A DNA stretch of 64,000 bases from Podarcis pityusensis (taxonomy: Eukaryota): the NCBI GenBank assembly GCA_964106645.2, contig OZ067050.1. The stretch is one strand, 5' to 3'. Made by a program: the position numbers and the translations under genes. The stretch's first letter is position 1. Every line of letters begins with the position of its first letter. Positions 10,789 to 48,100 of this stretch are shown in pieces. The notes under the pieces were generated by a model. That model ran no database searches and was not told the origin of the DNA. It was given only the letters and a program-made list of their open reading frames with translations.

Positions 10789-10988
10789 NNNNNNNNNNNN
10801 NNNNNNNNNNNNNNNNNNNNNNNNNNNNNNNNNNNNNNNNNNNNNNNNNNNNNNNNNNNNNNNNNNNNNNNNNNNNNNNNNNNNNNNNNNNNNNNNNNNN
10901 NNNNNNNNNNNNNNNNNNNNNNNNNNNNNNNNNNNNNNNNNNNNNNNNNNNNNNNNNNNNNNNNNNNNNNNNNNNNNNNNNNNNNNNN
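10789..10988. other. Assembly gap (200 N)
   Basis: Run of exactly 200 N that cuts a SINE on its left side. Confidence 1.
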
Positions 10989-26100: not shown

Positions 26101-29100
26101 CTCAGAGCCAGATGCAGCCAGCCTCTTTTCCCTTCACTATCCTTTATCCCCTGCATTGGTTTAAAATTAGCAATGCACTTCTGCTCCTCACAATTAAAAC
26201 TCCCTGTACCTTTGCTCCTGATGATGGAAGCATAAAAATATCCCCTCCACAATGAAAACCAGCACACCAGAGAGAAGGCCTTTAGCCTATATTCTCTACA
26301 TGGTGGGAATAATACCTCTTACCTCTCTGGGCAGGTCCACGCCATACATTTAAAGAACATTTAATGCACATTTTGGAGAAGCCAAGTGTTTTAAATGTGC
26401 ATTGAATGTTATTTAAATAGGAAGGGGAACTGTACTTCCCATGATCCTTTGGTGGAAGTCATGTGCTTTAAATGAGATTTGGGTGTACTTTACATGTATG
26501 GTGTGGATCCTCTAACTCATCTTTGGTTGGCTGCCTTGTCCCCTCCGACTCTGCTCCTGGTTGTCTTCTGCCATGATCCTCCTATGCATCACAGCCTTCC
26601 CTGCTCTGTTCATCGAACTACTTCCTATTCCTCCTTCAGGACTCACTACTTGAACAAAATATTGACTCCCCAGTTGGCTTGATTTAGAAGCAGTTGAAAT
26701 TCTCTAACTTCCACACAAAATGTCCTTTTAGAGGTAGGGAGGGAGGTAGGTTGGTAGGTAGATAGATACTGTAGATACAGACATACCTTGGAAGTTGAAC
26801 GGAATCCGTTCCAGAAGTCTGTTCGACTTCCAAAATGTTTGACTTCCAAGGCACAACTTCTGATTGGCTGCAGTAGCTTCCTGAAGCCAATCGGAAGCCA
26901 TGGAAGCTGCGCCAGATGTTCAGCTTCTGAAAATCATTCAAAAACCGGAACAATCACTGTATAATGTTGGGGAAACAAGTAATATCACTTACGTCAAGTT
27001 TGGAAAGCAGCTCAAGTTCTCAATTTTCTCTATTTGGTTCTAAAATGAAATTAACATTAATCAGCTTCAGAGCCTCTGAATAATGGAGCCCACACACAAA
27101 CACTTTTTTTCTGCCTGTGTTCCTGGTTCAATACTCCTTCAACACACAACCAAAGTTTTTCACAAAGTCCTTGAACTTGGGCCGATACCTTTCTCCTGGG
27201 ATGCTTCTACACTAACTGACCAGGCTTTGACAGAGCCCCATCTTTTCAAGAGAATGTTGTTGTATCATGGCATTTAATGGTGTGGTGACATATTTTACCT
27301 GTTGCAGGTAGAGGCTGTGGACCTGCTCTAATCCTTGCAGATTTGCGATGCAGCTAATTCTCTCTCTGTCTAGCCGGAGGGTATGAAGAGAAGTCAAGGC
27401 TTGGGATCTAAAAGGAAGAGAAGTTTATCAGAAATCAGCCCCACAGCTCCTCTCCTTCCAGCCCTGAATATTATTACCATCAGAATGAAAGCTTAATGCC
27501 AGCTTAAACATCCATAAGATACTCACATACTCTCTGGGGACTCTTTTTCCACTGGAATGTTCAGGTTCCTCTGAGCAATGAGGGATTTCGTCATACTCAC
27601 TCCTCCTATGGGGAGACAACTTCTGTGAGTTATCTGAAAGCAAAACCACTGGAATTCCCTTTAGATTGCAAAGCCAGGTGATGTTTAGCTAACAATTCAC
27701 TTGAAGTGGCATATTAGACCAAGGGTAGTAATAAAAAAATAAGCATGTCTTCTAAAGGCTCAAATCGCCTCCTATTCATTGACTTCATGATGCTCTAGGG
27801 TTGCCTTATTTTGAAGAGCAAAAAAGAGGACGCATCTGCCGACTTCTACATTTAACTGTGGCTCGCTATGACGACTCTACCCATGAAAAAGAGGACGTGT
27901 CCTGGAAAACAAGGACACATGGCAATGCTATGCAGGGATGACCAGAACATAATTTGTAGTTCAGTGTTGGGACTAGTCATAGAATCATAGAATCATAGAG
28001 TTGGAAGAGACCACAAGGGCCATCGAGTCCAACCCCCTGCCAAGCAGGAAACACCATCAGAGCACTCCTGACATATGGTTGTCAAGCCTCTGCTTAAAGA
28101 CCTCCAAAGAAGGAGACTCCACCACACTCCTTGGCAGCAAATTCCACTGTCGAACAGCTCTTACTGTCAGGAAGTTCTTCCTAATGTTTAGGTGGAATCT
28201 TTTTTCTTGTAGTTTGGATCCATTGCTCCGTGTCCGCTTCTCTGGAGCAGCAGAAAACAACCTTTCTCCCTCCTCTATGTGACATCCTTTTATATATTTG
28301 AACATGGCTATCATATCACCCCTTAACCTCCTCTTCTCCAGGCTAAACATGCCCAGCTCCCTTAGCCATTCCTCATAAGGCATCGTTTCCAGGCCTTTGA
28401 CCATTTTGGTTGCCCTCCTCTGGACACGTTCCAGTTTGTCAGTGTCCTTCTTGAACTGTGGTGCCCAGAACTGGACACAGTACTCCAGGTGAGGTCTGAC
28501 CAGAGCAGAATACAGTGGCACTATTACTTCCCTTGATCTAGATGCTATACTCCTATTGAAGAGGCCCAGAATTGCATTGGCTTTTTTAGCTGCCACGTCA
28601 CACTGTTGGCTCATGTCAAGTTTGTGGTCAACCAAGACTCCTAGATCCTTTTCACATGTACTGCTCTCAAGCCAGGTGTCCCCCATCTTGTATTTGTGCC
28701 TCTCATTTTTTTTGCCCAAGTGCAATACTTTACATTTCTCCCTGTTAAAATTCATCTTGTTTGTTTTGGCCCAGTTCTCTAATCTGTCAAGGTCGTTTTG
28801 AAGTGTGATCCTGTCCTCTGGGGTGTTAGCCACCCCTCCCAGTTTGGTGTCATCTGCAAATTTGATCAGGATGCCCTTGAGTCCATCATCCAAGTCGTTG
28901 ATAAAGATGTTGAATAAGACCGGGCCCAAGACAGAACCCTGTGGCACCCCACTAGTCACTCTTCTCCAGGATGAAGAGGAACCATTGATGAGCACCCTTT
29001 GGGTTCAGTCAGTCAGCCAGTTACAAATCCACTGAGTGGTAGCATAGTCAAGACCGCATTTTACCAGCTTCTTTACAAGAATATCATGGGGCACCTTGTC

Positions 29101-31345
29101 AAATGCCTTGCTGAAATCAAGGTAGGCTACATCCACTGCGTTCCCTTCATCTACCAGGCTTGTAATTCTGTCAAAAAACGAGATCAGGTTAGTCTGACAT
29201 GACTTATTTTTCAGAAATCCATGCTGACTATTGGTGATCACAGCATTCCTTTCTAGGTGCTCACAGACTGTTTGCTTAATGATCTGCTCCAGTCCTTTTT
29301 TAGTGGATCACCTGGCACCTGCTGGTTGCTGGGATTCTGCTAAGGAAGCTTACGTGGACTTTGATGTCATCCATCAAGGCTCTGACTACATTCATATGGT
29401 TTTAAGGAAGAGACTGAGTGCATATTTGTATATTTAGACACTTAACATTGATTAGTTATGCCTGCATATTCTCATTAAAAAAAGAACCAGAAAAACTGAC
29501 ATCAGCCCTCCGTTGGTTGGCAAGACTGAACAACCATCTTCCTTTCTCCTCTGAACAGAGGAACATTGCAAGACCTGTTCTCTGAGCAAATGCAGCAGTG
29601 GTTGGTGTAGGTTGACATGTCTCCACCATTTTGTAGTCCTGTCTCAGCCATTTTGTGCTATCTGATGCTCCCATGGCAGCCATATTGTGACTGGCGCCCA
29701 TGACACTTTCTTAAAATTCCACAGCTGCTGCCCATCATGAACCATGATTTGCAAGATCAGCAGCAACAGCAGCAGATACGTTCTATGCCTGAGATATTCT
29801 TAGTCTCTTGTTAATTATGCCATTTTAAATGTGCATTTTATATTTTACTTTCTTTAGTAATGTTTTCTTTTGAAATGTTATTATTAATTTTGTTTGTTAA
29901 CTTTGCTGTGTTAAATGTGCATTTTGCACTTGATCTCCTTTGTAATGTTTTCTTTGGAAATCTTCAAAACAACATTTTTGTTTCCCATTAATTGCATTGC
30001 TTCAAATGTATGCTTTATATTTGACTTTCTTCTGTACTGTGGATTGTTTTATTTGACATTTTAATGTAGGTTGTAAACCGCTTTGAGGTTTTTTTCCTTA
30101 AAAATATAAAGTGGGATAGAAATTAATAATAATAATAGCCCTATAATACAATGCACAGTCAATCAAAAGGATTTTAATTTTCAAGTTCAGCTAATTTTGG
30201 GCATTAGCTCTTACATGCAAACTTGTTTAATATTTATAATGGAAAGCAAATAAGATCTAACAAATTATTAAGAGCAATTGGCACAGGAGAGTACCTGGAG
30301 TGCCCATAATGATGATAAAGGAAGTTTTCCACCTGCTGAATTTCTCCTCCTCCCCAAAAGCCAGTCCTACACAGATATAGTTGTGGGTATCTATATAGAA
30401 TTCATCATGTGAAAGGCTGGACTGGATGAATCCCAAGCCGGAATGAAGATTGCTGGAAGAAATATCAACAACCTCAGATATGCAGATGACACAACTTTGA
30501 TGGTAGAAAGTAAGGAGGAATTAAAAAACCTCTTAATGAGGGTGAAAGAGGAGAGAGCAAAATATGGTCTGAAGCTCAACATCAAAAAAACCAAGATCAT
30601 GGCCACTGGTCCCATCACTTCCTGGCAAATAGAAGGGGAAGAAATGGAGGCAGTGAGAGATTTTACTTTCTTGGGCTCCATGATCACTGCAGATGGTGAC
30701 AGCAGTCACGAAATTAAAATACGTCTGCTTCTTCAGAGAAAAGCGATGACAAACCCAGACAACATCTTAAAAAGCAGAGACATCACCTTGCCGACAAAGG
30801 TCTGTATAGTTAAAGCCATGGTTTTCCCAGTAGTGATGTATGGAAGTGAGAGATGGACAATAAAGAAGGCTGATCGCCGAAGAATTGATGCTTTTGAATT
30901 ATGGTGCTGGAGGGGACTCTTGAGAGTCCCATGGACTGCAAGAAGATCAAACCTATCCATTCTTAAGGAAATCAGCCCTGAGTGCTCACTGGAAGGACAG
31001 ATCGTGAAGCTGAGGCTCCAATACTTTGGCCACCTCATGAGAAGAGAAGACTCCCTGGAAAAGACCCTGATGTTGGGGAAGATGGAGGGCACAAGGCAAA
31101 GGGGACGACAGAGGACGAGATGGTTGGACAGTGTTCTCGAAGCTGCCAACATGAGTTTGACCAAACTGCGGGAGGCAGTGGAAGACAGGAGGGCCTGGCG
31201 TGCTCTGGTCCATGGGGTCACGAAGAGTCGGACACGGCTTAATGACTAAACAACAACAAAATGTACCTGTACATATAACACACAGAGAACCAGCCCCACT
31301 TAGGGGTTAAGACACCTTCAGACACGATTACTCACCTCCTGACAT
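23102..31345 (-). CDS. LRRC46: Leucine-rich repeat-containing protein 46, 8 coding exons (~320-330 aa); exon 2 frame/acceptor ambiguous
   Basis: Minus-strand exons: 31336-31345 (ATGTCAGGAG|gtgagt; a second ATG at 31348), 27527-27633 (or 27527-27605), 27299-27407, 26993-27039, 25848-25957, 25062-25131, 24412-24566, 23102-23484. LRR peptides [79 protein letters not shown]; LRR cap [29 protein letters not shown]; acidic tract; basic C-terminus. Expected position between SCRN2 and MRPL10. Confidence 0.9.
27977..29292 (-). mobile_element. 5'-truncated CR1 LINE (RT domain + 3' end) in LRRC46 intron 1
   Basis: RT motifs [30 protein letters not shown] in ORFs 29005-29241 and 28057-28995, which are in frame and separated by one TGA; (ATTCTATG)n tail. 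Confidence 0.95.
30395..31260 (+). mobile_element. 5'-truncated RTE-BovB LINE in LRRC46 intron 1
   Basis: Open 268-codon ORF with [11 protein letters not shown] and the end ...[12 protein letters not shown], then a (CAA)n tail. Confidence 0.95.
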
Positions 31346-32351
31346 CATTGATGGAAAGGGTCACCAGCCGGGATACCTTGCCCACACCACTCCCAGCAGT
31401 GCAACAGGCCTATCTATGCTGAGTGTGAGGCACCCTGGGAATTTGTGGTGCTGTGAGGCGGGGAGGAAGGGAACCTGAAGCAGCTACAGTTTGGAAATCT
31501 CCATAGCAACCGTTCGGAACTAGTGTCAAGGTCGTCCTGGCAACAAGCCCTGGGAGCGGGGAGGGGAGAAACGGCCTTAGCAGCAGCAGCAGCTTGGAGG
31601 TTGCCTAGCAACGGGTGGGAAGTCGCGGGATCTCCTTAGCAACAGGCAGAGAGGGTGATGTGGGATTCCCCGTAGGAAGGCGTGGAAGGCTTCCCTTGAA
31701 AGTGGCCGTGCGGCAACTGCGGGAGGGGAGAGAGAAGGGTGATTTGTGGGGGTGGGGCAGTGCCCTTTCGGGCAAGAGCTTGCAGCAGGATTCAGCCTAG
31801 CAAGGAGAGTGCATGCATTGGGGTATGTTTCTCCTGAGGGAGGTTAGGCGGCTTGCGGGGCATCCTTTGCAAAGCCTCAAAGGCTTGAGAAAGGGGTCTT
31901 CCGAGTTGCACCTTGAGGAGAGGGGGAGCCCCAGTCCGAAGGAGGCCTTAAGCACACCTGGAGTGGGGGGTCTTGAGGAAGGGTCTCAGCTGTAGCGAGA
32001 GACGGGGCGGGGTGGGTCTCGATGAGATTTTATTTTTTTAAGAAGCAACAGCTTGGCGCATTTAGGGGAGTGGATGGAGGAGGTCGTGAAGTCTTCCCTT
32101 AGCAACAACAAGCGAGGGCTGCTGGGAAACAAAAACCTCCGCCTTTCCCTTCTGTGAAAGAATTGTGTAGCAGAAAAGCGCGCGCAACCCGTTGCTAATA
32201 GCCAGGAGGTTTCTTTTTATTTGTCAGGCTTCATAAGGGGAAAAAATGGGTTCCTTCTCCTTTAAACCTCCCCACCGCCCACCCAAGGAGGAGCTATGCT
32301 TCCCATCCCATAATGCTCGGCTTCTGTTCCCCGCACACCCCTCAAGATGGC
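31346..32351. promoter_or_regulatory. Bidirectional LRRC46/MRPL10 promoter with RFX X-box cluster and YY1-like motif
   Basis: Divergent ATGs ~1 kb apart; GC-rich. GTTGCCTAGCAAC at 31600-31612, GTCGTCCTGGCAAC at 31531-31544, further TAGCAAC half-sites at ~31504, ~31637, ~32100. AAGATGGC overlaps the MRPL10 ATG. Confidence 0.75.
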
Positions 32352-35300
32352 TGCCGTTACTCGCTGGTGCAAAAGGTTTTGCAAAACCGGTAAGGGCAAG
32401 ATCGCTGTTGGGGAAGTTTTGTTCTCCTGCAGATACTGGTTGCTAAGAACTGCCCCTTTCACGCCTTGCATTTTCTCCCCTTCCTCTAGTCTCGTGGGGA
32501 TCCAGTGCCCTACGTCTCGCCCTGTTGAAATCCAGAATCTTAATACTGTAATTTTCTTCCCACTCCACCATCCGAGATCCAGCATGTGGCATTTCTGGGG
32601 TGGTCTTTTTTTTTTTTAATTGGACAGACTCTGTGGCGTGTCCAGTCATTCATTTCAAGGCTAATAAGGTGTTGCAGAACTAAAGGCAGCTGCATCTGTT
32701 ATTTAAACCCGTGCAGCGCTGGAAGGACTCTTGTGGGGAGCGCTAGGCTCAAAGTTCTCAGAAATTCGGATTTTGACCGCAACCCAAACTTGCCTTTACT
32801 CAGATGTGTGATCGAATTTGTTGTGGCAAGGAAAATTACCCAGTCTGGCACTGAAGTGGAAGTGAAGTTGGTGGGCATGCAGATTGCGCTGTCGTAGAAT
32901 TATAGAACTGGAAGGGACCACCAGGGTCATCTAGTCCAACCCCCTGCAATGCAGGAATCTTTGGTAGAAAATAGATTTAGTTAGGTCTCTTAAAATACAT
33001 ACTCTATCATTTGTCATTCTTGTGAAATGTATTATAGGCCATTGGAATGTTTGTTGAATATGGTAACAATCTGGAGAAAATCTTCCCATAATGGGTTTCC
33101 TACCTGAGGCACCCAAAATGCAGACTGTCTCTAAAAAATATGAATGGGAGGCAGTCCTAAGTTCTTTGTGCCTCTGATACCATAACAGCAAAAATAACGT
33201 TCCTTACCACTTTGTCCCTTGCTATTAATTACCATATTTTTCGCCCTATAGGACGCACCGGCCCATAGGACGCACCTAGTTTTTTGGGGGGGAAATCAAG
33301 GGAAAAAAATTTATTCCCCCCCCCCCCTCAGGTTTGCACAGCCATCCCCAAGCTAGAAAAGGGAGACGGAGCGCTCCGTCTCCCTCTTCTGCCTTCAGGG
33401 ACAGCCTCTCTAGCCTCTGTGGGGCAGCGGCTTGCCCCGCTGTCCCCCGAGTTTGTGGGGCTGGCGGGGGGAGAAGCAAGCTTGCTTCTCCCCCCCCCCC
33501 CGCCAGCCTCCAGATCAGGTCAGGGAATAGCGGGGTGGGGCGCTCCGCCTCCCCGCTATCCCCCGAGCTTGTGGGGCTGGCGGGGGGGAGAAGCAAGCTT
33601 GCTTCTCCCCCCGCCAGCCTCCAGATCAGGTCGGGGAATAGCGGGGTGGCGTGCTCCGCCTCCCCGCTATCCCCCGAGCTTGTGGGCTGCAGGGTGCTGC
33701 CCACAAGCCTTGCGAGCCCGCGGGACCTCCCGCCGGGCTTGCAAGACTTGCGGATAGCTTCCTGAAGCCTGGAGAGTGAGAGGGGTCGGTGCGCACCGAC
33801 CCCTCTCGCTCTCCAGGCTTCAGCGAAAGCCTGCATTCGCCCCATAGGACGCACAAACATTTCCCCTTCATTTTTGGAGGGGAAAAAGTGCATCCTATAG
33901 GGCGAAAAATACGGTATATACTCAGAATTTACATTTACTGTATTTTTCCATGTATAAGACGAGCTTTTTTGACCCAAAAATGAGGTTCAGAATTTAGGGT
34001 CGTCTTATACACAGGTGGGGGTGGGGTGGGGTGGGGACGACGGGTCAATCGCCACTTAAAATCTCGGGCTCGTGCTTCATCCCAGCGGATGAGTGATTTT
34101 CAGCATTGGCCACTTGATTGTTGCGGGGGGGGGGGGGAATGCCGAAAATTGCTCACCCGCCGGAATGCAGCACACAACCGCTCGCGTTTCAGAAACCACC
34201 TATCAGCTGCCTGATTGCCGCCAGCGGCCACCAATCACACTCCCGCTTGCTGCGACAAGGGCAGCTGTCTGTTGGCTGCTGCAGCGACAATCGGGAGGGC
34301 TAATGGCAGCGATTGGGCAGCTGATAGGTGGTTTCTGAAACGCTAGCAGTTGTGTGCTGCATTCTGGCTGGTGAGCGATTTTCAGCATTCCTCCCCAAAT
34401 AACCCCCCAAAAAGCTCAGTCCTCCCCTGTTTTCTAATATAAGGTAAAGGGACCCCTGGCTATTAGGTCCAGTCGTGACCGACTCTGGGGTTGCGGCGCT
34501 CATCTCGCTTTATTGGCCGAGGGAGCCAGCTTCCAGCTTCCGGGTCATGTGGCCAGCATGACTAAGCCGCTTCTGGCGAACCAGAGCAGCGCACGGAAAC
34601 ACCATTTACCTTCCCACCTATTTATCTACTTGCACTTTGACGTGCTTTCGAACTGCTAGGTTGACAGGAGCAGGGACCAAGCAACGGGAGCTCACCCTGT
34701 CGCCGGGATTCGAACCTCCGTCTTTCTGATCGGCAAGTCCTAGGCTCTGTGGTTTTAACCCGCAGCGCCACCTGCTTCCCTCATTTTCTAATATAGGGGT
34801 CATCTTATACATGGGGGCGTCTTATAGACAGAAAAATATGGTACTTCCCTAGTACCATTAGGAATAGGCCATACTGTTGTCCCTCCAGGCCATTAACATT
34901 TGGTAAACCCCCCACTCAAGCTGTGTTAAGAATTCCTGTGTGCATACACATTCAAAATTGCGCTTTCGAACCTGTTTCAGCTCGTCTCTGACGCTGAGTT
35001 ACCAGAGCTGCATGCAATACTTTACCTATAGGCACACTATAAATATGTAGAACAGCATTCGGATGCTTCTTTGTGCCTTTAATTTTTCCACCTTCTGCTG
35101 TAATCTGTAATTTAGCTGGCTTGCATGAGTCACAAAGCTTTCTACTCTGTAAGTGTCTGTTAATGTCGCTGCATGTTTCTGGAGCACTAGTTTGGAATGT
35201 GTGGATTAGTATGTGGAGTGGCAACACCTGAGTGGGTGGCTATTTCATCCTTTGGAACACTAGGATTCTATGCTTCCCCTTAGCTCAGTTTTTTATGGTT

Positions 35301-36009
35301 GGAAAGGATGGGATTACACAGTATGAGAGCCCACAGAATGTCCTACATTTGGGGGTTGTGTCTTGGGGGGCCTAGCCATTCTGATTGTTCTGCTTTTTCC
35401 ATTGCTCCAGACTGGCTGCCCACCCTTCAGCTTATTCGCCATGGCTCCAAAGCCGTCACTCGCCATTGGAGACCTATGCATTTTGTGCGTCAGAAGCTGA
35501 TGGAGGTGACAAAATACATCCCACCAAAGCCTTTGATCCCGGAGAGGTGCATCAAACCCCAAGTGAAACAAGTTGAAGAGGTAACAACACCACACACCCT
35601 TCTGCGCTGATTGTTACTGTCTAAACTCTATGGTGCAGAGCCCGCAAAATCATAGAGTAGGCTCTCTGCCCTTCTTTATCCGTGTTTTTGCCAATTGCAG
35701 CAGGGCTGTTATGAACTCTGAATGCAAATGATGTTTGATGTTCTGCTCTTTTCCTGAATCTTCCCTGTATTCCTTTCAGTGCCTGCTGAAGACATTATTA
35801 TATAGACAAGACTACCCCACCTACTCTGATGTTTAGAAAGTTTTAGGCAGTTTTATTTGTTTTAGTCTACTTTGCCGTGGTTTTAATGTTCTGTATGTTT
35901 TAAATTACGGTTGTAAACTTTTGGTGATAATTTTATTGCTTTATCTGTAAACTGCTTTGAGGTTTTTCTACAATATAGCTGTGTGTGTGTGTGTGTGTGC
36001 GCACGCGCG

Positions 36010-36043
<34 letters not shown>

Positions 36044-39000
36044 CAGCGGTACCTAAGAAGTCCATTCGACTTCCAAAACGTTCAGAAACCAAGGTGCGGC
36101 TTCCGATTGGCTGCAGGAAGTTCCTGCAAACAATTAGAAGCTGTGGAAGTCGTGTTGAACATTTGGGTTCCAAAGAACGTTCGCAAACTGAATGCTCACT
36201 TCCAGGTTTGTGGAGTTTGGGAGCCAAAACATTCGACTTGCAAGGCGTTTGGGATCCAAGGTACGAGTGTGTGTGTGTGTGTATAAACACACACACACAT
36301 ACATACCTTTTGAGGCACAATCATTGGCAAGCCTTGTCACTTTGGCTCTTAACTGTTTGCCCCAAGTGAAGGATTGGAGGTACACAAAACAGGTCACTGA
36401 ATTTTTGTTCTGGAAAATGAAGTCCTTGAAAAAGGACTCATTTGCAGAGAATCCTCTTTAAGGGCTTGAATTGAAGGAACTACTTAGGGTAATGCAAAGG
36501 TGTCTTATTACCTAATGGAATTCACTCTCCTATGACAAACAATTACTGAAACTTTCCTCATTGCTATGTGATACAGGGAAGGCTGCTCATCACTCTAAAG
36601 TTGGTTTCCGTAACTCACAAATATATATTTTACAAGAGTTTGTAGTATAGAAGTAAATAAATAATAATGAGTGATAATCACTATAGTAGGTTTTGCACAT
36701 GTTGCCTGTTTAGCCTGGATATAGCTCAGTTGGTTAAGAGTGTGGTGCTGATAGCGCCAAGGTTGCAGGTTCGATCCCCATCTGGGGCAGCTTCATATGC
36801 CTGCATTGCAGGGGGTTGGACTAGATGATCCTCAGGGTCCCTTCCAACTCTGTGATTCTTTGAAGTCACAGGGATAAAGCTTCATAGCACGAAAACTTTC
36901 TAACAGAGTTCAGGCTTGAATGAAAACATTTCATTTGGTTTTAATGCTTCACTAGGTATGCACAGAGCATGGAAATGCCCTGTTCCCTGGGCAGGGTAAG
37001 TAGATCTAAATCAGTTGCTTAAATCATCGGGAACACCATGTCAATTTAAACCACTGATTTAAATCAAGTTTAATCTAATTCATTTGTTTTCTGAACAGGC
37101 ATGCATACTACTTGCCATTGCTGTTCAATTTGCAACTGAACAGAACCTTTATGTTACCTACAGAGTTAACTCAAAACCTCTGCACTCTGCCTGCCTTTTG
37201 CAGCACAGGATTTACATCTGTGTAGCTTTCAGCAGCTTTGTGGGTTTTCACTCTTTTCAAGTCTAATGGCAGCAAACAAAATTTCTCGCCTTCCCCAGGA
37301 AAATGGCTACGTGAAGCTGTTGCGTCGAGATGTCGAACAAGCTTTCCACGAGAGTAAAATGATTGCTATCTGCCAGTACAACGAAGTTCCTGCAAATGAC
37401 ATGGTACTCATGGGGTATCGACTGCGGAAGTACAACATCCATGTCAAATACTTCCCCAGTGAGGTACAGTTACATGCAAACAGTTCTTTTAGGAATAGAG
37501 AGGGCAACGTGCCTTAGAGCATGTTGCCTCATTTTCCCCCAAGCAATTTTCCGTATCCTGTGAAAGCAAACCTTAATCAGAGCTAAGCTTTGACATTCAA
37601 ATCTGCTGTATTGGATATATGAAATGCTGCATGAGGTGCCAGTATTCATTGATATCTTGACAGACTTTGTATCTGGGCAGCAGATAAACAGAAACTGCTG
37701 TTGCTTAGGCATTTCATTTGTTGTTTAGTCGTTTAGTCGTGTCTGACTCTTCGTGACCCCATGGACCAGAGCACGCCAGGCACTCCTGTCTTCCACTGCC
37801 TCCCGCAGTTTGGTCAGGCTCATGTTTGTAGCTTCAAGAACACTTTCCAGCCACCTCGTCCTCTGTCGTCCCCTTCTCCTTGTGCCCTCCATCTTTCCCA
37901 CCATCAGGGTCTTTTCCAGGGAGTCTTCTCTTCTCATGAGGTGGCCAAAGTATTGGAGCCTCAGCTTCAGGATCTGTCCTTCCAGTGAGCACTCAGGGCT
38001 GATTTCCTTCAGAATGGATTTCATTAGAAAGCACCAATTTCCAGCAAGTTTGGCATGCGAAATTTTGAGACCCTTTTGGAGACGTCTGCTCAGAAACAAC
38101 AACATCCAAGGAATTTTGAGTGAAGCGGAAATTTTGATTTGGCTGGCAAAATTCCCTAGAGGGCCTTCTCGTCCCTTGCCCAATGTATAGCAGGAAAATA
38201 TCAAATAGCAATTAGAGTCTGACCAGTCCAATGGCTCAGTCCAATTCTACAGCATACTAATCCAACTACTTCTCCCAGTCCCCTGTATTTTCTTCCCCAT
38301 ATCCCCCTAACTAGATTCAGCCTTTCCTTCAACTAAAGGTTGCCTTATAGCTAGTGGTGCCAGACCGCAACCCGGAGACCCTTCATGGTCCTTTAAAAGT
38401 TCCAACGCAATAAGAGAGGTTGTAGTTACAGCATCACTTAACTCTCTCTTTTTTTTTTTTAGAAAATGTTTATTTTCACATAGACAAATATACATGAAAT
38501 ACATAACATACATAAGATAACATATAATACAGAAAACAATACAAATGAATGAAAACAATGAAATAAGAAAAGATAGAAATAACGAACATAAACAAATACA
38601 ATATATTACACTTACATGACAAATTAAAATATATAACTTCCAATAATTTTATACTACTTATATTATCTGTATTCACTTAACTCACTTGTAAATCAAAACT
38701 GGAGTCCTGCCCTGGTTCAGCAGGTATTTCCCCCATGTTTAATTGGTTCTTTACTTCCACCTTTCCAGGTCATGATACCCTTTCTTTCGGAATCCAAATA
38801 TAAGAATCTCCTCCCTCTCTTTGTGGGGCGCAACCTCCTACTGATGAGTCCGGAAACGAGGGCACAGGAAATGCTGCGAGTCCTGAGGGGTGTGCCACAG
38901 ATCAGTCTCCTAGGTAAATGTTGAAAGATGGATGGCTAAATTCTGTGTTATCAAATGGATTCAGAAATGAGGACCAGGTCATGAGTTGAGGTATTCTGGA

Positions 39001-41678
39001 ATGCAGATTTCCATCTGGATATTGAGGCAGTGATTCACAACTCTTGTTGATTTAGCAAGCATGGAAGCATCCCGATGGAATTTTATTACCAATTAAAACA
39101 GACTTCACAGGCTGGTAAATAGAGAGGCAAATGCAGCCTAATGCTCATCTCTGTACTATAGCTTCCTAAAAGATTACATCACATGCTGACTGTTGTAATA
39201 TTATTAAATAGTTTGAAGCATCAAAGTGAATACAAAAGGCAGTTGTGGTGCAGTCCCTATTCAAAAGGCTTATCTTTGGTGATCGCTCGTAGCCGAGTAA
39301 AATTGTCTTCCATGAACACGGTTTTAACACTGAGTGTGTAAGTGACTGTGGAGGCCAATTCTGGATCCACACATCCTTCCACAGTGGGGACATAGGTTTC
39401 CGGGTGGGACTTGATCACGGTGAGGATTTGCCAAGCGTGCCTTAGCACATTTCTCCCTTTTGTCCTGAGTTCAAGCACCTTCAAAGTCCATGACACCTTT
39501 GGTAAAGGCTGTTCTCCAGTTGGAGTGCTCGCAGGCCAGTGTTTCCCAGTTGTCTGGGTTTATACTACATTTTTTTTTAGATTTGCCTTGAGAGAGTCTT
39601 TAAACCTCTTCTGTTGACCGCCAGCATTACGCTTTCCATTTTTAAGTTCGGAATAGAGTATATCAACTTATTCAGCTAATAAGATAGGAGTTGGGGAAAA
39701 CAAGTGGGGGATGCCAGCAACAACAAGTGTGGATGGCAGAGGGGTGAGTCAGGCAGCAATGAAGGAAAGGCTCTTAATAACAGAGAGGAAACCAGTGAAC
39801 ATCGAGCTACAGGGAGAGGCCATAGAATGGTCTGAAGACAGACGATGCAGATTCCTTACCAAAGCTAAGGGAATCTGACCCTGGAAATAGCCTGGATGTG
39901 AGACCACTTGGGAAACATGCAAAGTTCTTTGGAAAGAAGAGGTGGGTAAAAACTGAGACTCGGGTGCATGAACTTGAATTCCCCGTGCTAACCCAGCTTT
40001 GTCTGCCTGGGTACCAAGACTCAGCACACCATTATTCCAGGTTAGTCCATTAATTTCAGTGCACCTCCTTTGAGTAGGACGTTGTTGGATACAACCCTAT
40101 GTCTCCTTTAAAAAATGATTGTCCTTTAAAAAAAATTATTCAATCTACGACCAGTACTATAATGTTTTGATTTGGCAACCCTCTTCCAAATCACTTTTTT
40201 TTTAGTTTTTTATTTATACTTTTCAAATTTATACATTTGATTAGATTTACAATCAATTGAACATTTCAAAATTTGAGTTCCTTCTCCCGCTTTCTGTGGT
40301 TCCTTAAATTTGTTTTTTAATACCTTCTGCATATCCAAGTTCATTTAACTTGCTCATTTAATTATCTACTGTAAATATATACACTTATAAAACTGCAAGT
40401 TATTACAATAATCCTGCTATTGTTTTTATCTGTTTACAATTTATCTGTAAATATTCAATAAACCATTTCCATTCTTTTACAAAAAGTTTGTTATTTTGAT
40501 TTCTTATTCTTCCGGTAAGTTTCTCCATTTCTGCATATCCCATAAGTTTTTGTATCCATCCTTCCTTTACTGGGACTTCTGCTTCTTTCCACTTTTGGAC
40601 AAGTAACATTCTTGCTGCTGTAGAAGCATAGGTAAATAAATTTCTATACAATTTAGGTAGTTCTGTCCCCATAATTCCCAAAAGAAAAGCTTCTGGGGTT
40701 TTTTAAAATAAAAGTTATTTTGAACATCCTTTTCAATTCATTATATATCATTTCCCAGTAATCTTTAACCTTACTACAAGACCACCACATATGATGAAAA
40801 GACCCTCTTTCTCTTTACATTTCCAACATTTGTTTGATTTAGATTTATACATTTTTGCCCGTTTACTTGGTGTTAGATACAAACAATATATCATTTTCAT
40901 ATACCGTACTTTTCCGTCTATATTTTGGGGGGCTCAAATTTAAGAAAATGGGGGGAGATGGCAGAGTTGTTGAGCTTTTTTTAGGGGAAATTGCTGAAAA
41001 TCATTCACCTGCCGGCATTACAAAATCCGACTCTCTTCTGTCCCCTCACTGGCAGAAGCTGACAATCGCCCGCCCTATTGCTGCAGCATCAAGCCAATCA
41101 CCACCACCCATTGACGCAGCAACCAATAACACTCACAATAGCTGCTGATGGCCACGGCAGCAACCAATCAAACATCCACCCCATGGCACTATCCATGTAT
41201 AAGACCACCCCCTTTTTCTATCATGATTTTCACAAAAAAATACCGAGTCCTATGCATGGAAAAGTACGGTAATTTTCCCTTAAACTATAACATGCTGTAA
41301 ATTTTATATCCATGTTCCACAATCATTCCCAAGCTTCCATATCTATATTATGACTGGTATCTGTCATCACTTTTTTTACTTTTAGTACTTCTGGATGTTC
41401 CTGATGGTGCCTATTTTCTCATCCTTCCAGGAGCTTGTGTTGACAACACCATCCTAAGCAAACAAGGTTTCACAAACTATGCCAAACTGCCGTCCATGGT
41501 GACTGCCCAAGGGGAGGTCGTGGGTGCCCTCTCTCTCATGACATCCCAGACTAGCACACTTCTACAACGCGGCCCTGTTCACTTGACTTCCTTGCTGGAC
41601 CAGTATGTCAAACAGCAGAACTGTGAATCAGTTGAAGCAAAGGAGACAGGGACTCTGGACAAGTCGGAAGCCCTTTGA
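32347..41678 (+). CDS. MRPL10: Mitochondrial ribosomal protein L10 (uL10m), 5 exons, 256 aa
   Basis: Exons 32347-32389, 35411-35580, 37299-37463, 38769-38913, 41431-41678; GT-AG, phases consistent, 771 nt. Motifs [72 protein letters not shown]. Basic N-terminal presequence-like segment. Confidence 0.95.
33232..33914. mobile_element. Tc2/mariner-like MITE with tandem GC-rich hairpin units
   Basis: TA-CCATATTTTTCGCCCTATAGGACGCAC ... GTGCATCCTATAGGGCGAAAAATACGG-TA. Confidence 0.88.
33938..34841. mobile_element. Tc2/mariner-like MITE (second subfamily) containing an inverted repeat and a Sauria SINE
   Basis: TA-CTGTATTTTTCCATGTATAAGACG ... CGTCTTATAGACAGAAAAATATGG-TA. Confidence 0.8.
34442..34783 (-). 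mobile_element. Sauria SINE nested in a Tc2-like MITE
   Basis: Reverse-complement match; TSD TTTTCTAATATA at 34430-34441 and 34784-34795. Confidence 0.9.
36713..36862 (+). mobile_element. tRNA-Ile-derived SINE with the same CR1-type tail
   Basis: tagctcagttggtt(a)agagtgtggtgctGATagcgccaaggttgcaggttcgatcccc (anticodon position GAT at 36750-36752) followed by cctgcattgcagggggttggactagatg..cccttccaactct. Confidence 0.85.
37719..38017 (-). mobile_element. BovB 3' fragment with 8-bp TSD
   Basis: BovB C-terminus and (CAA)n tail; TSD ATTTCATT at 37711-37718 and 38018-38025. Confidence 0.92.
38925..39222 (+). repeat. Diverged copy of the distal MRPL10 3'UTR inside MRPL10 intron 4
   Basis: Co-linear match to 41760-42069, with shared blocks such as ctggaatgcagatttccatctggatattgaggcagt, gttgatttagcaagcatg, aattaaaacagacttc and ctgttgtaatattattaaata. 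Confidence 0.93.
39250..39660 (-). mobile_element. RTE-clade (non-BovB) LINE 3' fragment
   Basis: Minus-strand translation [28 protein letters not shown]...WETLA...[18 protein letters not shown], typical of an RTE ORF C-terminus. Confidence 0.8.
40195..41390 (-). mobile_element. Degraded L1-clade LINE 3' region, interrupted by a Tc2-like MITE
   Basis: Frameshifted remnants resembling [15 protein letters not shown] and [31 protein letters not shown]; A-rich tail. Confidence 0.75.
40904..41269. mobile_element. Tc2/mariner-like MITE inserted in an L1 remnant
   Basis: TA-CCGTACTTTTCC ... GGAAAAGTACGG-TA. Confidence 0.8.
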
Positions 41679-42049
41679 TGAACTTTCTTCCCATTTCTGC
41701 TCATTGCTTCAGGCACAACTTGTATTCTGTTTGTTGCATGTTTGTATCCTGGGTGGGGCAAAGTTGGATGGCTAAATTCTGTATATCAAGTGGATTTGGA
41801 AATGAGGATCAGATCATGAACGAGGTATATGCTGGAATGCAGATTTCCATCTGGATATTGAGGCAGTACTGGATTCACAACTCTCGTTGATTTAGCAAGC
41901 ATGAAAGCATCCCGATGGAAGTTTATTATCAATTAAAACAGACTTCGCAGGCTGATAAATAGAGAGGCAAAATGTTAAATGCGGCCTAATGTTCATCTCT
42001 TGTACAGCTTCCTAAAAAAATTATGTCACATGCTCACTGTTGTAATATT

Positions 42050-42100
42050 ATTAAATATTTTTAAGCATCCTGCTGTGTGTGTCTTACTGTGTTGGGATGA
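42050..42100 (+). terminator. MRPL10 polyadenylation site
   Basis: TGTA upstream, ATTAAA at 42050-42055, GT-rich downstream element (tgctgtgtgtgtcttactgtgttggg) after 42070. Confidence 0.6.
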
Positions 42101-42123: not shown

Positions 42124-43140
42124 CCGTATTTTTCGCTCTATAGGACGCACTTTTTTCCCTTCAAAAATGAAGGGAAAATGTGTGTTCGTCCTATGGAGCG
42201 AAGACGCCATAGCCCCGCGACCCTCTCCCGGCTGGAGAGGTGACGGGCGGCTATGGCAAGAGCCTCAATAGCCGCCCGTCACCTCTCCAGCCGGGAGATG
42301 GTCGTGGGGGGCTGCTTTAGCCCCGCGCGCGCTCTCCCGGCTGGAGAGGTGACGGGCGGCTATGGCAAGAGCCTCAATAGCCGCCCGTCACCTCTCCAGC
42401 CGGGAGAGGGTCGCGGGGGGCTGCTTTAGCCCTGCGCGCGCTCTCCCGGCTGGAGAGGTGACGGGCGGCTATGGCAGGAGCTTCTATAGCCGCCCGTCAC
42501 CTCTCCAGCCGGGAGAGCGCGCGCGGGCACCCCGCGACCCTCTCCCGGCTGGAGAGGTGACGGGCGGCTATTGAGGCTCTTGCCATAGCCGCCCGTCACC
42601 TCTCCAGCCGGGAGAGCGCGCGCGGGGCTGCTGGAGAGGTGACCGGCGGCTATAGAAGCTCCTGCCATAGCCGCCCGTCACCTCTCCAGCCGGGAGAGGG
42701 TCGCAGGGGGCTGCTTTAGCCCCGCGCGCGCTCTCCCGGCTGGAGAGGTGACGGGCGGCTATGGCAGGAGCCTCTCTGCTGCGCCTTTCCGCTGCTCCCT
42801 GACCTGCTCTTTGGGGCTGGTGGTGGGCTTCCCCCCGCCAGCCCCAAAGAGCAGGTCGAAATGAACCTGAAGCCTGGAGAGCGAGAGGGGTCAGTGCACA
42901 CCGCCCCCTCTCGCTCTCCAGGCTTCCAAGGTAGCCGCCTGAACGCACCTTAAACGGCACCTTGTTTTAGAGCGGGAAAACAAGAGGGGGAAAGTTCTCC
43001 CCCTCTCTGCGCAGCGCCTCCTGCCACTTCGCTGAAGGGGCGCTGGGCAGAGAGGGGGAGAAATTTTTTTCCTTGTTCTCCCCCCTCTAAAACAAAGTGC
43101 GTCCTATTGTCCGGTGCGTCCTATGGTGCGAAAAATACGG
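42124..43140. mobile_element. Tc2/mariner-like MITE with a long hairpin array
   Basis: TA-CCGTATTTTTCGCTCTATAGGACGCAC ... GTGCGTCCTATGGTGCGAAAAATACGG-TA. Confidence 0.9.
42212..42772. repeat. Array of five hairpins plus one half-unit (32-bp arms, 13-nt loops, ~109-bp period)
   Basis: Arm ctctcccggctggagaggtgacgggcggctat alternates with its exact reverse complement; the fifth unit has a shortened left arm. Confidence 0.95.
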
Positions 43141-44782: not shown

Positions 44783-44814
44783 CTGCTCAACGCCTCATGA
44801 TTTCATAGAATCAT

Positions 44815-45195
44815 GTTGTTGTTTAGTCGTTTAGTCATGTCTGACTCTTCATCTCTTCATGATCCCATGGACCAGAGCACACCAGGCACTCCTGTCTTCC
44901 ACTGCCTCCCGCAGTTTGGTCAAACTCATGCTGGTAGCTTCGAGAACACTATCCAACCATCTCGTCCTCTGTCGTCCCCTTCTCCTTGTGCCCTCCATCT
45001 TTCCCAACATCAGGGTCTTTTCCAGGGAGTCTTCTCTTCTCATGAGGTGGCCAAAGTATTGGAGCCTCAGCTTCAGGATCTGTCCTTCCAGTGAGCACTC
45101 AGGGCTGATTTCCTTAAGAATGGATAGGTTTGATCTTCTTGCAGTCCATGGGACTCTCAAGAGTCTCCTCCAGCACCATAATTCAAAAGCATCAA
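44815..45195 (-). mobile_element. BovB 3' fragment with 13-bp TSD
   Basis: BovB C-terminus; TSD TTCATAGAATCAT at 44802-44814 and 45196-45208. Confidence 0.92.
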
Positions 45196-48100
45196 TTCAT
45201 AGAATCATAGAATTGTATAAATTTAACAAAAGCATGGCATGCACACTTTCAAGCCTATTATAGCAGTAAAGGGTAGGAACTTGCTTTTAAAAAAATAACG
45301 CGCTGAGTGAAAACAGAATTGGAGGCTGTTGAATGGGATGTGGACCTATTGCCATGACTTTGACGTTTCTGGCCTTTGTGCCTCTTTGCTGTTGTTTCCG
45401 TTTGAGCCTTTTGTGCCCTTCCAGGAATGTACGGTTAAACAAGTCCAACCCTCTTTTTCCTATTGCATTCCTCCAACTTACCACTGAATGACCTGACAAA
45501 ACACGCAGCCGTTTCTAGAATATCTGTGGTCCCAGCATGAGTCATAAATGCATTCTGTGTGATAACAACCAGCTGTTCCTGAAAAGACAAAAATTGCTTT
45601 CCCCGCTGGTGGTCTGCCAAGTGACCAGTGAAAAGGCAATAGGCACGACAGAGCAAGTAGCAGTTCATTGCCCTAGGAACTCTTAATTTGTGAGGAAGGG
45701 TATGAGACTTCTGTAGTTGCCAGGCTCCTTTAATGGGGAGCCTTGACAGCTAAAGCAGGTTTGAAACAGGTTAAGATTTGTGGCATAATTAGGCATTGGG
45801 GAGTGATTCATGTATGTTGTGGCTGGTTGTATCTGCTAAGCTTGTTTAGGAAAGGCATTCAGTGACATTACCGCCCGCCAATTGAGCACCTGTAGAGAGA
45901 GAGAGACAGAGATTTGAAGAGAAAGGCTTTTTGAATACCATTTCTCCATAATCCAAAATACGCTTGGGCAGGTTGAGATTACTCAGTGGAGAATGTACCA
46001 ACAGCTTCCTATTTTTCAAAGCCTCAAGCAGGATAACAATTGTAACTCTCTTGAACACCATAAAAATGCTATAGAAATAGATGGTGTTATTTCATCTCAG
46101 ATTAAGCACTGACAATTAATCCTTCAGAATTAGGCACTGGGAGGCAGATGTGCTTGTTACACCAAATGAATCGTAAGTCTTCATGAGAGTCAGCTACATC
46201 ATCGGCTGTAGAGGTTTTCCAAATACTAACCTCCGAAACATAACTTTCATTCCAAAGACTACGCATCAGAGTGCACATAATTATGCTGTAATGGGATATA
46301 AAACTGCAAGAGGGGTTCAGAATTTCAAACCTCGGTGTATGGTAGAAAAGTGGTGACGTCTAATCTTGGGACAGAAACTATTAGCCTAGCCAAAATAGGT
46401 GAGTCAATTTTAGCTAATCTGGACCACGAAAGTCAGGAAATGTAAATAAAGGTAAAATGGACAGATCCTGCATACATAACTTATGTAGGCAAAAGCAGGC
46501 AGTTCCTGGGTGCTCTTGCACTCAAGTACAGGAATGGTGGGCCTCTGAAGGGCCTAAAACATCTGGAGGACCACATAACTATTGGCCATACTGCCTGGGA
46601 TTGAAGCAAGTTGAGTCCAGCATCAACTGGAAGCCCAGTGGTTCCACATCCATGTTCTAGTATATAACAAAGAAAAGGAATTCCAGTGGTAAGCTGTTCA
46701 GGCTGGCTTTGCTTTCAAGGATTACCTTTGGAGGAACATCCAAGGCTTCATAAACCATGGTTTATGGTGACATGGATAAGCAACTCCCTCCCACTGCACG
46801 CTGGAATGCACTAGACCAGAGTTCCCCATAATGTCTGAACCTGCCAGCTCTGGCTTAATGTTGATCAACAAATCAGGAAAATAAGCCAGGAGGACATCCT
46901 TAAACGGGATTGAATTTTGAGACACAGTTGTAGGGCTAGGGACAAAACCTGCCCCTGGTCTCAGACTCTAGCAGATTTAGTCCGCACCTTGGGAAATCCA
47001 GCTGCTGTGTATACAGCTGATATGGTACATTGCTTTTAGGCACACAAACCATGATTGATGTTGCTAGGAGAGCCGAGGATGGTTTGGAAAGGCAGCTGAT
47101 AAGCACTCAAAAAGTAAATACGGTATAATATAAAATCAGTGGACACACTCCTGTAAACAATTGTCTTGCACAAACCTTACTTACATGAGTGGGAGAAATG
47201 CACTGATGCCCATCACGTTGATAGGGCCTGCTCAGGAGAACTCGCCGGATGATGTGAACAATTAGCACAGCCTAGGAAGCTGCCTTATAGGAAGTCAGAG
47301 GATTGGTTCATCTAGTCCAGGCTTCCTCAAACTCAGCCCTCCGGGTGTTTTGAAACTACATCCCCCATCATCCCTGACCACTGGTCATGCTAGCTAGGTA
47401 TCATGGGAGCTGTAGGCCAAAAACATCTGGAGGGCCGAGGTTGAGGAAGCCTGATGTATTTGATTGTTTCAATGGTGGTGGATGTGGTTATCGTTTAGAG
47501 ACGCTTCGTAGGAAGTGACTCATAGATGGAATAAAATAAACAAATGACTACTAGCCTCCTCTTTCTCTTTAACAGCTTGTTTTTGTTGAAACTGACAGTC
47601 CTTTTGTGGTACTTTAAAGGCGGACAGATATATTACATGGCACAAGCTATTGTGACCCAACCCATTTTGTCGCACACAAACACGACTAAATATTTAAAAA
47701 ACTCTGAGTAAATGCAAGAGGCATAAGCCTTTTATATATTTCAGGGCCATTTGGTCTCACTGTTAATCCCCCACACCCCAGAGATGTATATCTCTGTGAA
47801 CTGAAGATCATCATTCCATGCACCTGACGATGGGGCTCACAATTACAAAAGCATACATTACAACAAATCCATTCTTTAAGGGGCCGTTTGCAGCTTCTCT
47901 GTACTTGCACTGTTTGCTCCAGATAGGATCTGATCCCCCTAGCCTCTTTCAGAAGCATCGGTAATTATTTAAGTAGGGATTTTCAGATTATATATATGGC
48001 TAGGGTTGAAAATGAAAGCAGTTTGCAGAGTATTTAACAGGAATAATTGCACACACGCAATCCAGGCGAAACTGAGGACTTCTGGCGGCGGCGGGAGAAT

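What the first reader, a model, noticed from the sequence alone, without database searches (positions are those of the whole stretch)
38914..39222. MRPL10 carries a copy of its own 3'UTR and poly(A) signals right behind an in-frame stop in intron 4
Seen in sequence: 38925-39222 is a co-linear, moderately diverged copy of the distal MRPL10 3'UTR (41760-42069) in the same orientation, and it retains both ATTAAA hexamers (39092, 39203). It starts only 11 nt after the exon-4 donor. Read-through of that donor gives ...QISLL-G-K-C-stop (TGA 38922-38924), and the UTR copy begins at the next base. Homology ends 14 nt after the distal ATTAAA, where cleavage would be expected. It is followed by AAA rather than the genomic GT-rich downstream element. 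Inference: (a) this looks like a 5'-truncated retrocopy of the MRPL10 mRNA 3' end inserted into its parent gene; (b) it could act as an intronic polyadenylation switch producing a ~177-aa uL10m lacking the whole last exon, under almost the same UTR control. By established L10 biology the C-terminal helix binds the bL12 stalk dimers, so such a product would not assemble a stalk. No clear TSD is visible, so a local DNA duplication is not excluded.
Basis: partly seen in the sequence, partly recalled or inferred. Interest (0 to 1): 0.85.

Follow-up and report, generated by a model that had tools for sequence, protein, structure and literature searches.

The report
Lizard gene copies own tail inward
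In wall and green lizards, a gene for a mitochondrial ribosome protein (MRPL10) carries an old copy of its own mRNA end inside its last intron, which can give a shortened transcript but shows no sign of being kept by selection.

Summary
The copy is real: 38924-39222 matches the distal MRPL10 3'UTR (41760-42069) at 85.7%. It is not a dispersed repeat. The donor is native UTR in Rhineura, Elgaria and a lizard mRNA contig. The copy sits at the same junction in four other lacertids (P. lilfordi, P. muralis, Lacerta agilis, Zootoca) and is absent from Rhineura, Elgaria, Phrynocephalus and a fourth outgroup: one insertion, roughly 55-75 My old. Corrections: the in-frame stop is older than the copy (present in all outgroups); there is no target-site duplication, about 40 nt of intron were lost, with 5' microhomology; only the distal ATTAAA is conserved. 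This fits capture of the gene's own mRNA end (or its DNA) at a break, not ordinary retrotransposition. The predicted 177-aa protein ending GKC is annotated in P. lilfordi (RNA-seq plus Iso-Seq annotation), and lacertids lost the donor's +5 G. But the transcript's 3' end is unseen, four RefSeq lacertids list no such isoform, and the copy evolves at intron rate (14.5% vs 12.6% variable columns, p=0.35). Best reading: a neutral, leaky intronic poly(A) site. No reads could be checked. No earlier scan note describes it.

The parts
32347..32389 (+). MRPL10 coding exon 1 (ATG to donor)
   Evidence: Sequence; matches the N-terminus of lacertid uL10m proteins
35411..35580 (+). MRPL10 exon 2
   Evidence: tblastn 98-100% to lacertid loci
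37299..37463 (+). MRPL10 exon 3 (start of the Ribosomal_L10 domain)
   Evidence: Weak Pfam PF00466 hit, E 0.047; tblastn
38769..38913 (+). MRPL10 exon 4
38914..38924 (+). Intron-4 donor, weakened at +5 in all five lacertids (GTAAAT/GTAATT vs GTAAGT in Rhineura, Elgaria, Phrynocephalus), and in-frame stop TGA 38922-38924, older than the copy
38924..38929 (+). 5' junction: AAAG(C/T)T microhomology shared by host intron (Rhineura) and donor UTR
38928..39222 (+). Inserted copy of the distal 3'UTR; distal ATTAAA 39203-39208 kept in all five lacertids, proximal ATTAAA 39092 lost in Zootoca
39223..39231 (+). 3' junction: 8-9 A-rich nt (poly(A) remnant, filler or eroded host DNA); about 36-45 nt of ancestral intron missing here
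39232..39262 (+). Ancestral intron resumes; holds a GT-rich stretch about 20-30 nt behind the copy that could act as a weak downstream element
   Evidence: the role is inferred
41431..41678 (+). Last coding exon (residues 175-256): last strands of the L10 domain and the long C-terminal helix
41760..42069 (+). Donor: distal native 3'UTR, with TGTA 42041, ATTAAA 42050, T-rich run, predicted cleavage about 42069
   Evidence: Hexamer conserved in Rhineura and Elgaria; core invariant among lacertids
42070..42100 (+). Native GT-rich downstream element, not copied

Best explanation
About 55-75 My ago, in a lacertid ancestor, a break just inside MRPL10 intron 4 was repaired with the 3' end of the gene's own processed mRNA (or its cDNA) as template. 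About 295 nt ending at the cleavage site were pasted in sense orientation, joined at the 5' side by a 4-6 nt microhomology, and about 40 nt of intron were lost. By chance the piece landed right behind an old in-frame stop. It now offers a leaky 'composite' intronic poly(A) site: when the (now weaker) exon-4 donor is not used, the RNA can end at the copied signal and encode a 177-aa uL10m without the bL12-binding helix. This is a minor, probably unstable by-product, and the copy drifts like intron. Shown: copy, age order, deletion, microhomology, ancestral stop, neutral rate, annotated 177-aa isoform. Inferred: RNA template, use of the copied signal, low abundance, no function.
For: Same junctions in five lacertids, empty site in four outgroups. 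Copy and donor differ by 11-14% vs 6-7% between genera, with 15 fixed differences and no conversion tracts. The end lies 14 nt after the conserved hexamer, inside the 10-30 nt cleavage window (PMC10651852), and the GT-rich DNA behind it is excluded. Target deletion, microhomology and short extra bases are the marks of break-repair insertions (PMC1920257); TSDs are found in 79% and target deletions in 4% of ordinary events (PMC12016303). A random landing within 10 kb of the source has a chance near 1e-5 per event, so a local process is needed. Used composite intronic sites tend to have weak donors, lie near the donor and sit in last introns, all met here. P. lilfordi has the 177-aa isoform from a transcript-based annotation step. 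Neutral rate.
Against: No poly(A) tail survives beyond 3 A. Elgaria and L008 suggest the host may have had GCAT(C/T) at the 3' junction, so the end point could be microhomology, not the cleavage site. The 3' end of the 177-aa transcript was not seen; it may be plain intron retention, and the same annotation lists another probably noisy isoform at this intron (266 aa). No reads could be examined.
Confidence: 0.5

Rival explanations
1. Same outcome, but the template was the neighbouring DNA: a break at the intron start was repaired by microhomology-driven template switching to the UTR 1-3 kb downstream. The end near the poly(A) site is then chance or due to a GCATC microhomology.
For: Source and target were about 1.1 kb apart if the intron was as short as in Rhineura (797 nt). 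Microhomology at the 5' end and possibly at the 3' end. No tail, no TSD, no exon junction inside the copy that would prove an RNA step.
Against: The end must fall into a window of about 20 nt by chance. The 8-9 extra A-rich bases are unexplained. Rhineura, the closest outgroup, lacks GCATC at the site.
Confidence: 0.33
2. The copy was co-opted: it is a regulated intronic polyadenylation switch that tunes full-length uL10m or makes a stalk-less form, helped by the weakened donor and the conserved stop.
For: Retained in all five lacertids; distal hexamer intact in all; +5 G lost only in copy carriers; stop at the same codon in all nine squamate sequences while neighbouring bases vary; 40 nt of 3' flank with 1 variable column, lowest 6% of intron windows; annotated isoform.
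Against: Copy varies like intron (40/276 vs 444/3526 columns, p=0.35). Six invariant columns are expected 39% of the time at that rate. The 29-nt core around the signal has no substitutions at the native site but 3 lineage substitutions, 1 fixed change in the T-rich run and 2 small deletions in the copy. RefSeq lists one isoform each for P. muralis, P. raffonei, L. agilis and Zootoca. Truncation cuts the domain's last strands.
Confidence: 0.1
3. A classical LINE-made processed retrocopy, 5'-truncated, that landed in its parent gene by chance; AAAG on both sides is a 4-nt TSD.
For: AAAG flanks both ends; end at the poly(A) site; LINE remains are common in the window.
Against: About 40 nt of target are lost, which excludes a plain TSD; chance of self-insertion about 1e-5 per event.
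Confidence: 0.05
4. Two independent insertions of an unrecognised dispersed repeat.
For: A genome-wide search for further copies could not be run.
Against: The segment is present once, behind the last exon, in Rhineura (72-75%), Elgaria and a distant lizard mRNA contig, and holds the conserved poly(A) signal. No third copy in the window or ten loci.
Confidence: 0.02

Closest known systems
Endonuclease-independent (non-classical) L1 insertions at double-strand breaks (Sen et al. 2007, PMC1920257)
   Same: No TSD, deletion of target DNA, microhomology, short extra bases at a junction.
   Different: The insert is a host mRNA end, not L1, and the target is the source gene itself.
5'-truncated processed pseudogenes (LINE-driven retrocopies)
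   Same: Sense copy of the mRNA 3' end that stops at the predicted cleavage site.
   Different: No poly(A) tail, no TSD, no spliced junction inside; lies within the parent gene.
Composite intronic polyadenylation sites (PMC10651852; CstF-77 intron 3, PMC3708835)
   Same: Read-through of a weak donor in the last intron, nearby signal, short in-frame tail then stop.
   Different: The signal is a copy of the gene's own terminal site; unlike CstF-77 no conservation above intron level; use not shown by reads.
Retrocopies nested in introns of other genes, linked to shorter host isoforms (PMC7290577)
   Same: An intronic retro-like copy sits just behind a shortened isoform.
   Different: Host and parent are the same gene; I found no paper on such a case, which is a limited search.
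Local templated insertions by microhomology-mediated break repair (own knowledge: SDSA, FoSTeS/MMBIR, polymerase theta)
   Same: Nearby template, deletion at target, microhomology.
   Different: At about 295 nt it is long for polymerase theta, and the end coincides with a poly(A) site.

Membership tests
Processed retrocopy by target-primed reverse transcription | 3' end at the mRNA cleavage site | tested here: inconclusive
   14 nt after the conserved ATTAAA, inside the 10-30 nt window; real cleavage site not mapped
Processed retrocopy by target-primed reverse transcription | Poly(A) tail | tested here: inconclusive
   Only 3 A, then 8-9 A-rich nt, same in five species; an old tail could have decayed
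Processed retrocopy by target-primed reverse transcription | Target-site duplication with intact target | tested here: not met
   About 36-45 nt of target missing relative to Rhineura, Elgaria and L008
Processed retrocopy by target-primed reverse transcription | Spliced exon junctions in the copy | tested here: inconclusive
   The copy lies wholly within the last exon, so the feature cannot show
Break-repair (endonuclease-independent or templated) insertion | No TSD and deletion of target DNA | tested here: met
   that the deletion came with the insertion is inferred
Break-repair (endonuclease-independent or templated) insertion | Microhomology at junctions | tested here: met
   5' end 4-6 nt; 3' end uncertain
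Break-repair (endonuclease-independent or templated) insertion | Nature of template (RNA or DNA) | not testable with these tools
   No feature separates them firmly
Composite intronic poly(A) site | Hexamer plus upstream UGUA near a weak donor in the last intron | tested here: met
   ATTAAA 39203, TGTA 39194, donor without +5 G
Composite intronic poly(A) site | GU/U-rich downstream element about 10 nt after cleavage | tested here: inconclusive
   First 15 nt A-rich; a GT-rich stretch at about +20 to +30
Composite intronic poly(A) site | Transcripts that read through the donor | tested here: met
   177-aa isoform CAI5790184.1 in P. lilfordi; one species, one annotation
Composite intronic poly(A) site | Polyadenylated 3' ends at the site | not testable with these tools
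Exapted regulatory element | Conservation above neutral intron rate | tested here: not met
   power is low with five species, since the whole native UTR is also near intron rate
Dispersed repeat | Many unlinked copies and absence from the orthologous UTR of outgroups | tested here: not met
   Native in outgroup UTRs; genome-wide count not run

The most novel reading that the evidence does not exclude
A germline record of a gene repairing a break with its own polyadenylated transcript in cis, which gave it a second terminal site that lacertids use in a regulated way to switch between full uL10m and a form lacking the bL12-binding helix.
Probability: 0.07. Interest if true: 0.8.

Novelty: new variant of a known kind. 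Interest (0 to 1): 0.42.

Why it matters
If the template was RNA, this is a dated natural germline case of transcript-templated repair at the transcript's own locus, a process known mostly from engineered systems (own knowledge), and it suggests a genome-wide screen for 'own 3' end in own intron' events. It also shows a simple route to a new terminal exon: one event supplies a ready poly(A) signal behind an existing stop. The pair of near-identical signals in two contexts is a natural test of how donor strength and downstream elements set poly(A) site use. It is also a usable clade marker for lacertids. If the short form is only noise, the biological weight is small.

Tried and rejected
After that call no letters of that stretch went to a search tool; they were used only in local scripts and one alignment. 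Searches went out in the same batch. The spliced model was searched exon by exon by reference; the joined protein was not built or searched. Full-length work used annotated proteins of other lizards. Human chains appeared in the PDB listings and were not followed; no human contig was fetched. The N run at 10789-10988 was left alone. AAAG as a TSD: rejected because of the target deletion. Gene conversion between copy and UTR: no tracts. A maximum-likelihood tree failed on a thread setting; distances were used instead. Splicing from a cryptic donor into the UTR as source RNA: no GT/GC donor fits the junction. Searches for early-branching lacertids (Eremiadini, Gallotiinae) found only distant lizards. 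The first count near the signal (10/56 vs 3/56, p=0.07) is inflated by a misaligned Zootoca indel; the hand-checked core is. Literature searches found no report on MRPL10 intronic polyadenylation or a self-inserted UTR.

Full report
Observation. The stretch 38924-39222 aligns to 41760-42069 on the same strand at 85.7% over 315 columns, E about 1e-97, and has no third copy in the window. The gene is MRPL10: the last exon matches mammalian uL10m at E 2e-20, and the exons match lacertid MRPL10 at 89-100%. The window is about 0.7% from Podarcis lilfordi and 4-5% from P. muralis in introns, so it is a close relative of P. lilfordi. Read-through of the exon-4 donor gives G-K-C-stop and 177 aa instead of 256.

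Distribution and age. The copy is present with the same two junctions in P. lilfordi, P. muralis, Lacerta agilis and Zootoca vivipara. It is absent from intron 4 of Rhineura (amphisbaenian), Elgaria, Phrynocephalus and an unnamed lizard contig L008. In Rhineura and Elgaria the donor segment stands once, behind the last exon, and it is part of an MRPL10 mRNA contig from another lizard. So it is native UTR and not a mobile repeat. Copies differ from donors by 11-14%, while copies or donors differ between genera by 5-8%; there are 15 fixed differences and no conversion tracts. This is one event about twice as old as the Lacertini radiation: about 56 My if P. lilfordi and P. muralis split 19 My ago, about 75 My if Lacertini are 37.6 My old (PMC6733905). 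These are rough clock figures.

Junctions. Rhineura shares the first 14-16 intron bases with lacertids, including the AAAG(C/T)T that also begins the donor match, so the 5' joint is a 4-6 nt microhomology. The conserved intron resumes 57-61 nt after the donor in Rhineura and L008 but only 23-25 nt after it in lacertids once the insert is removed; the missing part is also present in Elgaria. About 36-45 nt of target were therefore lost, and the AAAG on both sides is not a plain target-site duplication. At the 3' end the match stops 14 nt after the distal ATTAAA, which is conserved in Rhineura and Elgaria and lies within the usual 10-30 nt of cleavage (PMC10651852). The GT-rich DNA behind the native site was not copied; 8-9 A-rich bases follow instead. 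Against a firm RNA reading, Elgaria and L008 hint that the old target read GCAT(C/T) here, like the donor end, so microhomology could also set the end.

Mechanism of origin (inferred). Target deletion, microhomology and extra bases match insertions at double-strand breaks (PMC1920257) and are rare in ordinary retrotransposition (4% deletions, 79% TSDs; PMC12016303). A random landing in the parent gene has a chance near 1e-5 per event, so the process was most likely local. An RNA template made at the locus explains both the place and the end point; a DNA template explains the place and needs chance or microhomology for the end. I put these at about 0.55-0.6 and 0.35.

The stop. It is not part of the event. 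Rhineura reads G-K-S-stop, Elgaria and Phrynocephalus G-K-C-stop, L008 G-R-N-stop. Its constant position across squamates is curious (stop triplets are 4.8% of these introns) but bases near a donor change slowly, and I did not test it further.

Is the site used? P. lilfordi has an annotated 177-aa protein ending LLGKC (CAI5790184.1). In that project alternative forms came from PASA updates on RNA-seq and Iso-Seq (PMC10214862), so transcripts do read through this donor. The context fits used composite sites: weak donor, short distance, last intron. All five lacertids lack the +5 G that three of four outgroups have, though the donor is still no weaker than the gene's other donors by U1 matches. 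Limits: the transcript's 3' end was not seen, it may be intron retention; the same annotation has a 266-aa form from an upstream acceptor in this intron; RefSeq gives one form each for four other lacertids.

Is it selected? No sign of it. Among five lacertids 14.5% of copy columns vary, against 12.6% in introns (p=0.35) and 11.6% in the native UTR. The proximal ATTAAA is lost in the Zootoca copy and in the L. agilis and Rhineura UTRs. Keeping the distal hexamer is expected 39% of the time at the copy's rate. The 29-nt core around the signal has no substitution at the native site (one 3-nt contraction), but in the copy one fixed change in the T-rich run, three lineage substitutions and two small deletions. 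Five species give little power, so weak selection is not excluded.

The short protein. A model of P. muralis uL10m (mean pLDDT 79) has strands at 172-178 and 181-184, a helix at 185-193 and a long helix at 197-246, and matches uL10m and bacterial L10-L12 complexes. The human stalk carries six bL12m N-terminal domains on uL10m (PMC7438116, PMC8209036); that they bind the long C-terminal helix is established L10 biology (own knowledge). A stop at 177 removes that helix and cuts the domain's last strands, so the product would hold no stalk and is probably unstable (inference).

Verdict. A real, single, old self-insertion of the gene's 3' end at a repaired break, shared by Lacertini, giving a plausible but leaky intronic poly(A) site, with one transcript-based annotation of the predicted product and no evidence of selection. 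Each ingredient is a known kind; the self-insertion geometry I did not find described. The spliced model was searched exon by exon by reference and the joined step was left out. The scan's earlier notes hold nothing on this feature; the one nearby note concerns a young transposon behind the gene.

Noticed in passing
window 42124-43140: A 1.0-kb TA-flanked element with about 29-nt terminal inverted repeats sits about 54 nt behind the native cleavage site. It is absent from P. lilfordi, P. muralis, L. agilis and Zootoca, so it is young. Looks like a non-autonomous Tc1/mariner-type element (own knowledge).
   Followed up: partly
window 41384-41430: An upstream acceptor in intron 4 adds 15 residues in frame; annotated as the 266-aa form in P. 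lilfordi and open in the window.
   Followed up: partly
window 38922-38924 and L001, L005, L007, L008: The in-frame stop at intron positions +9 to +11 is kept (TAA or TGA) in all nine squamate sequences while neighbouring bases differ; possibly selection for an early stop on retained introns.
   Followed up: partly
L003:14194-14196: P. lilfordi MRPL10 ends five residues early (251 aa) through a new stop; the window and other lacertids keep 256 aa.
   Followed up: no
window 39232-39262: Short ancestral intron block still alignable in Rhineura, Elgaria and L008 and nearly invariant among lacertids (1 of 40 columns); may be a splicing element.
   Followed up: partly
window 30400-31260, 37714-38130, 44811-45198: BovB/RTE-like LINE 3' fragments with reverse-transcriptase remains and short tandem tails, 93% alike; a CR1/L2-like reverse-transcriptase frame at 28060-29004 on the minus strand.
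   Followed up: no
L010:1250-1381: In this distant lizard mRNA the homologous distal hexamer is lost and the contig ends 10 nt after a further ATTAAA, so the terminal site has moved in that lineage.
   Followed up: no
window 10789-10988: 200-base N run; left untouched.
   Followed up: no
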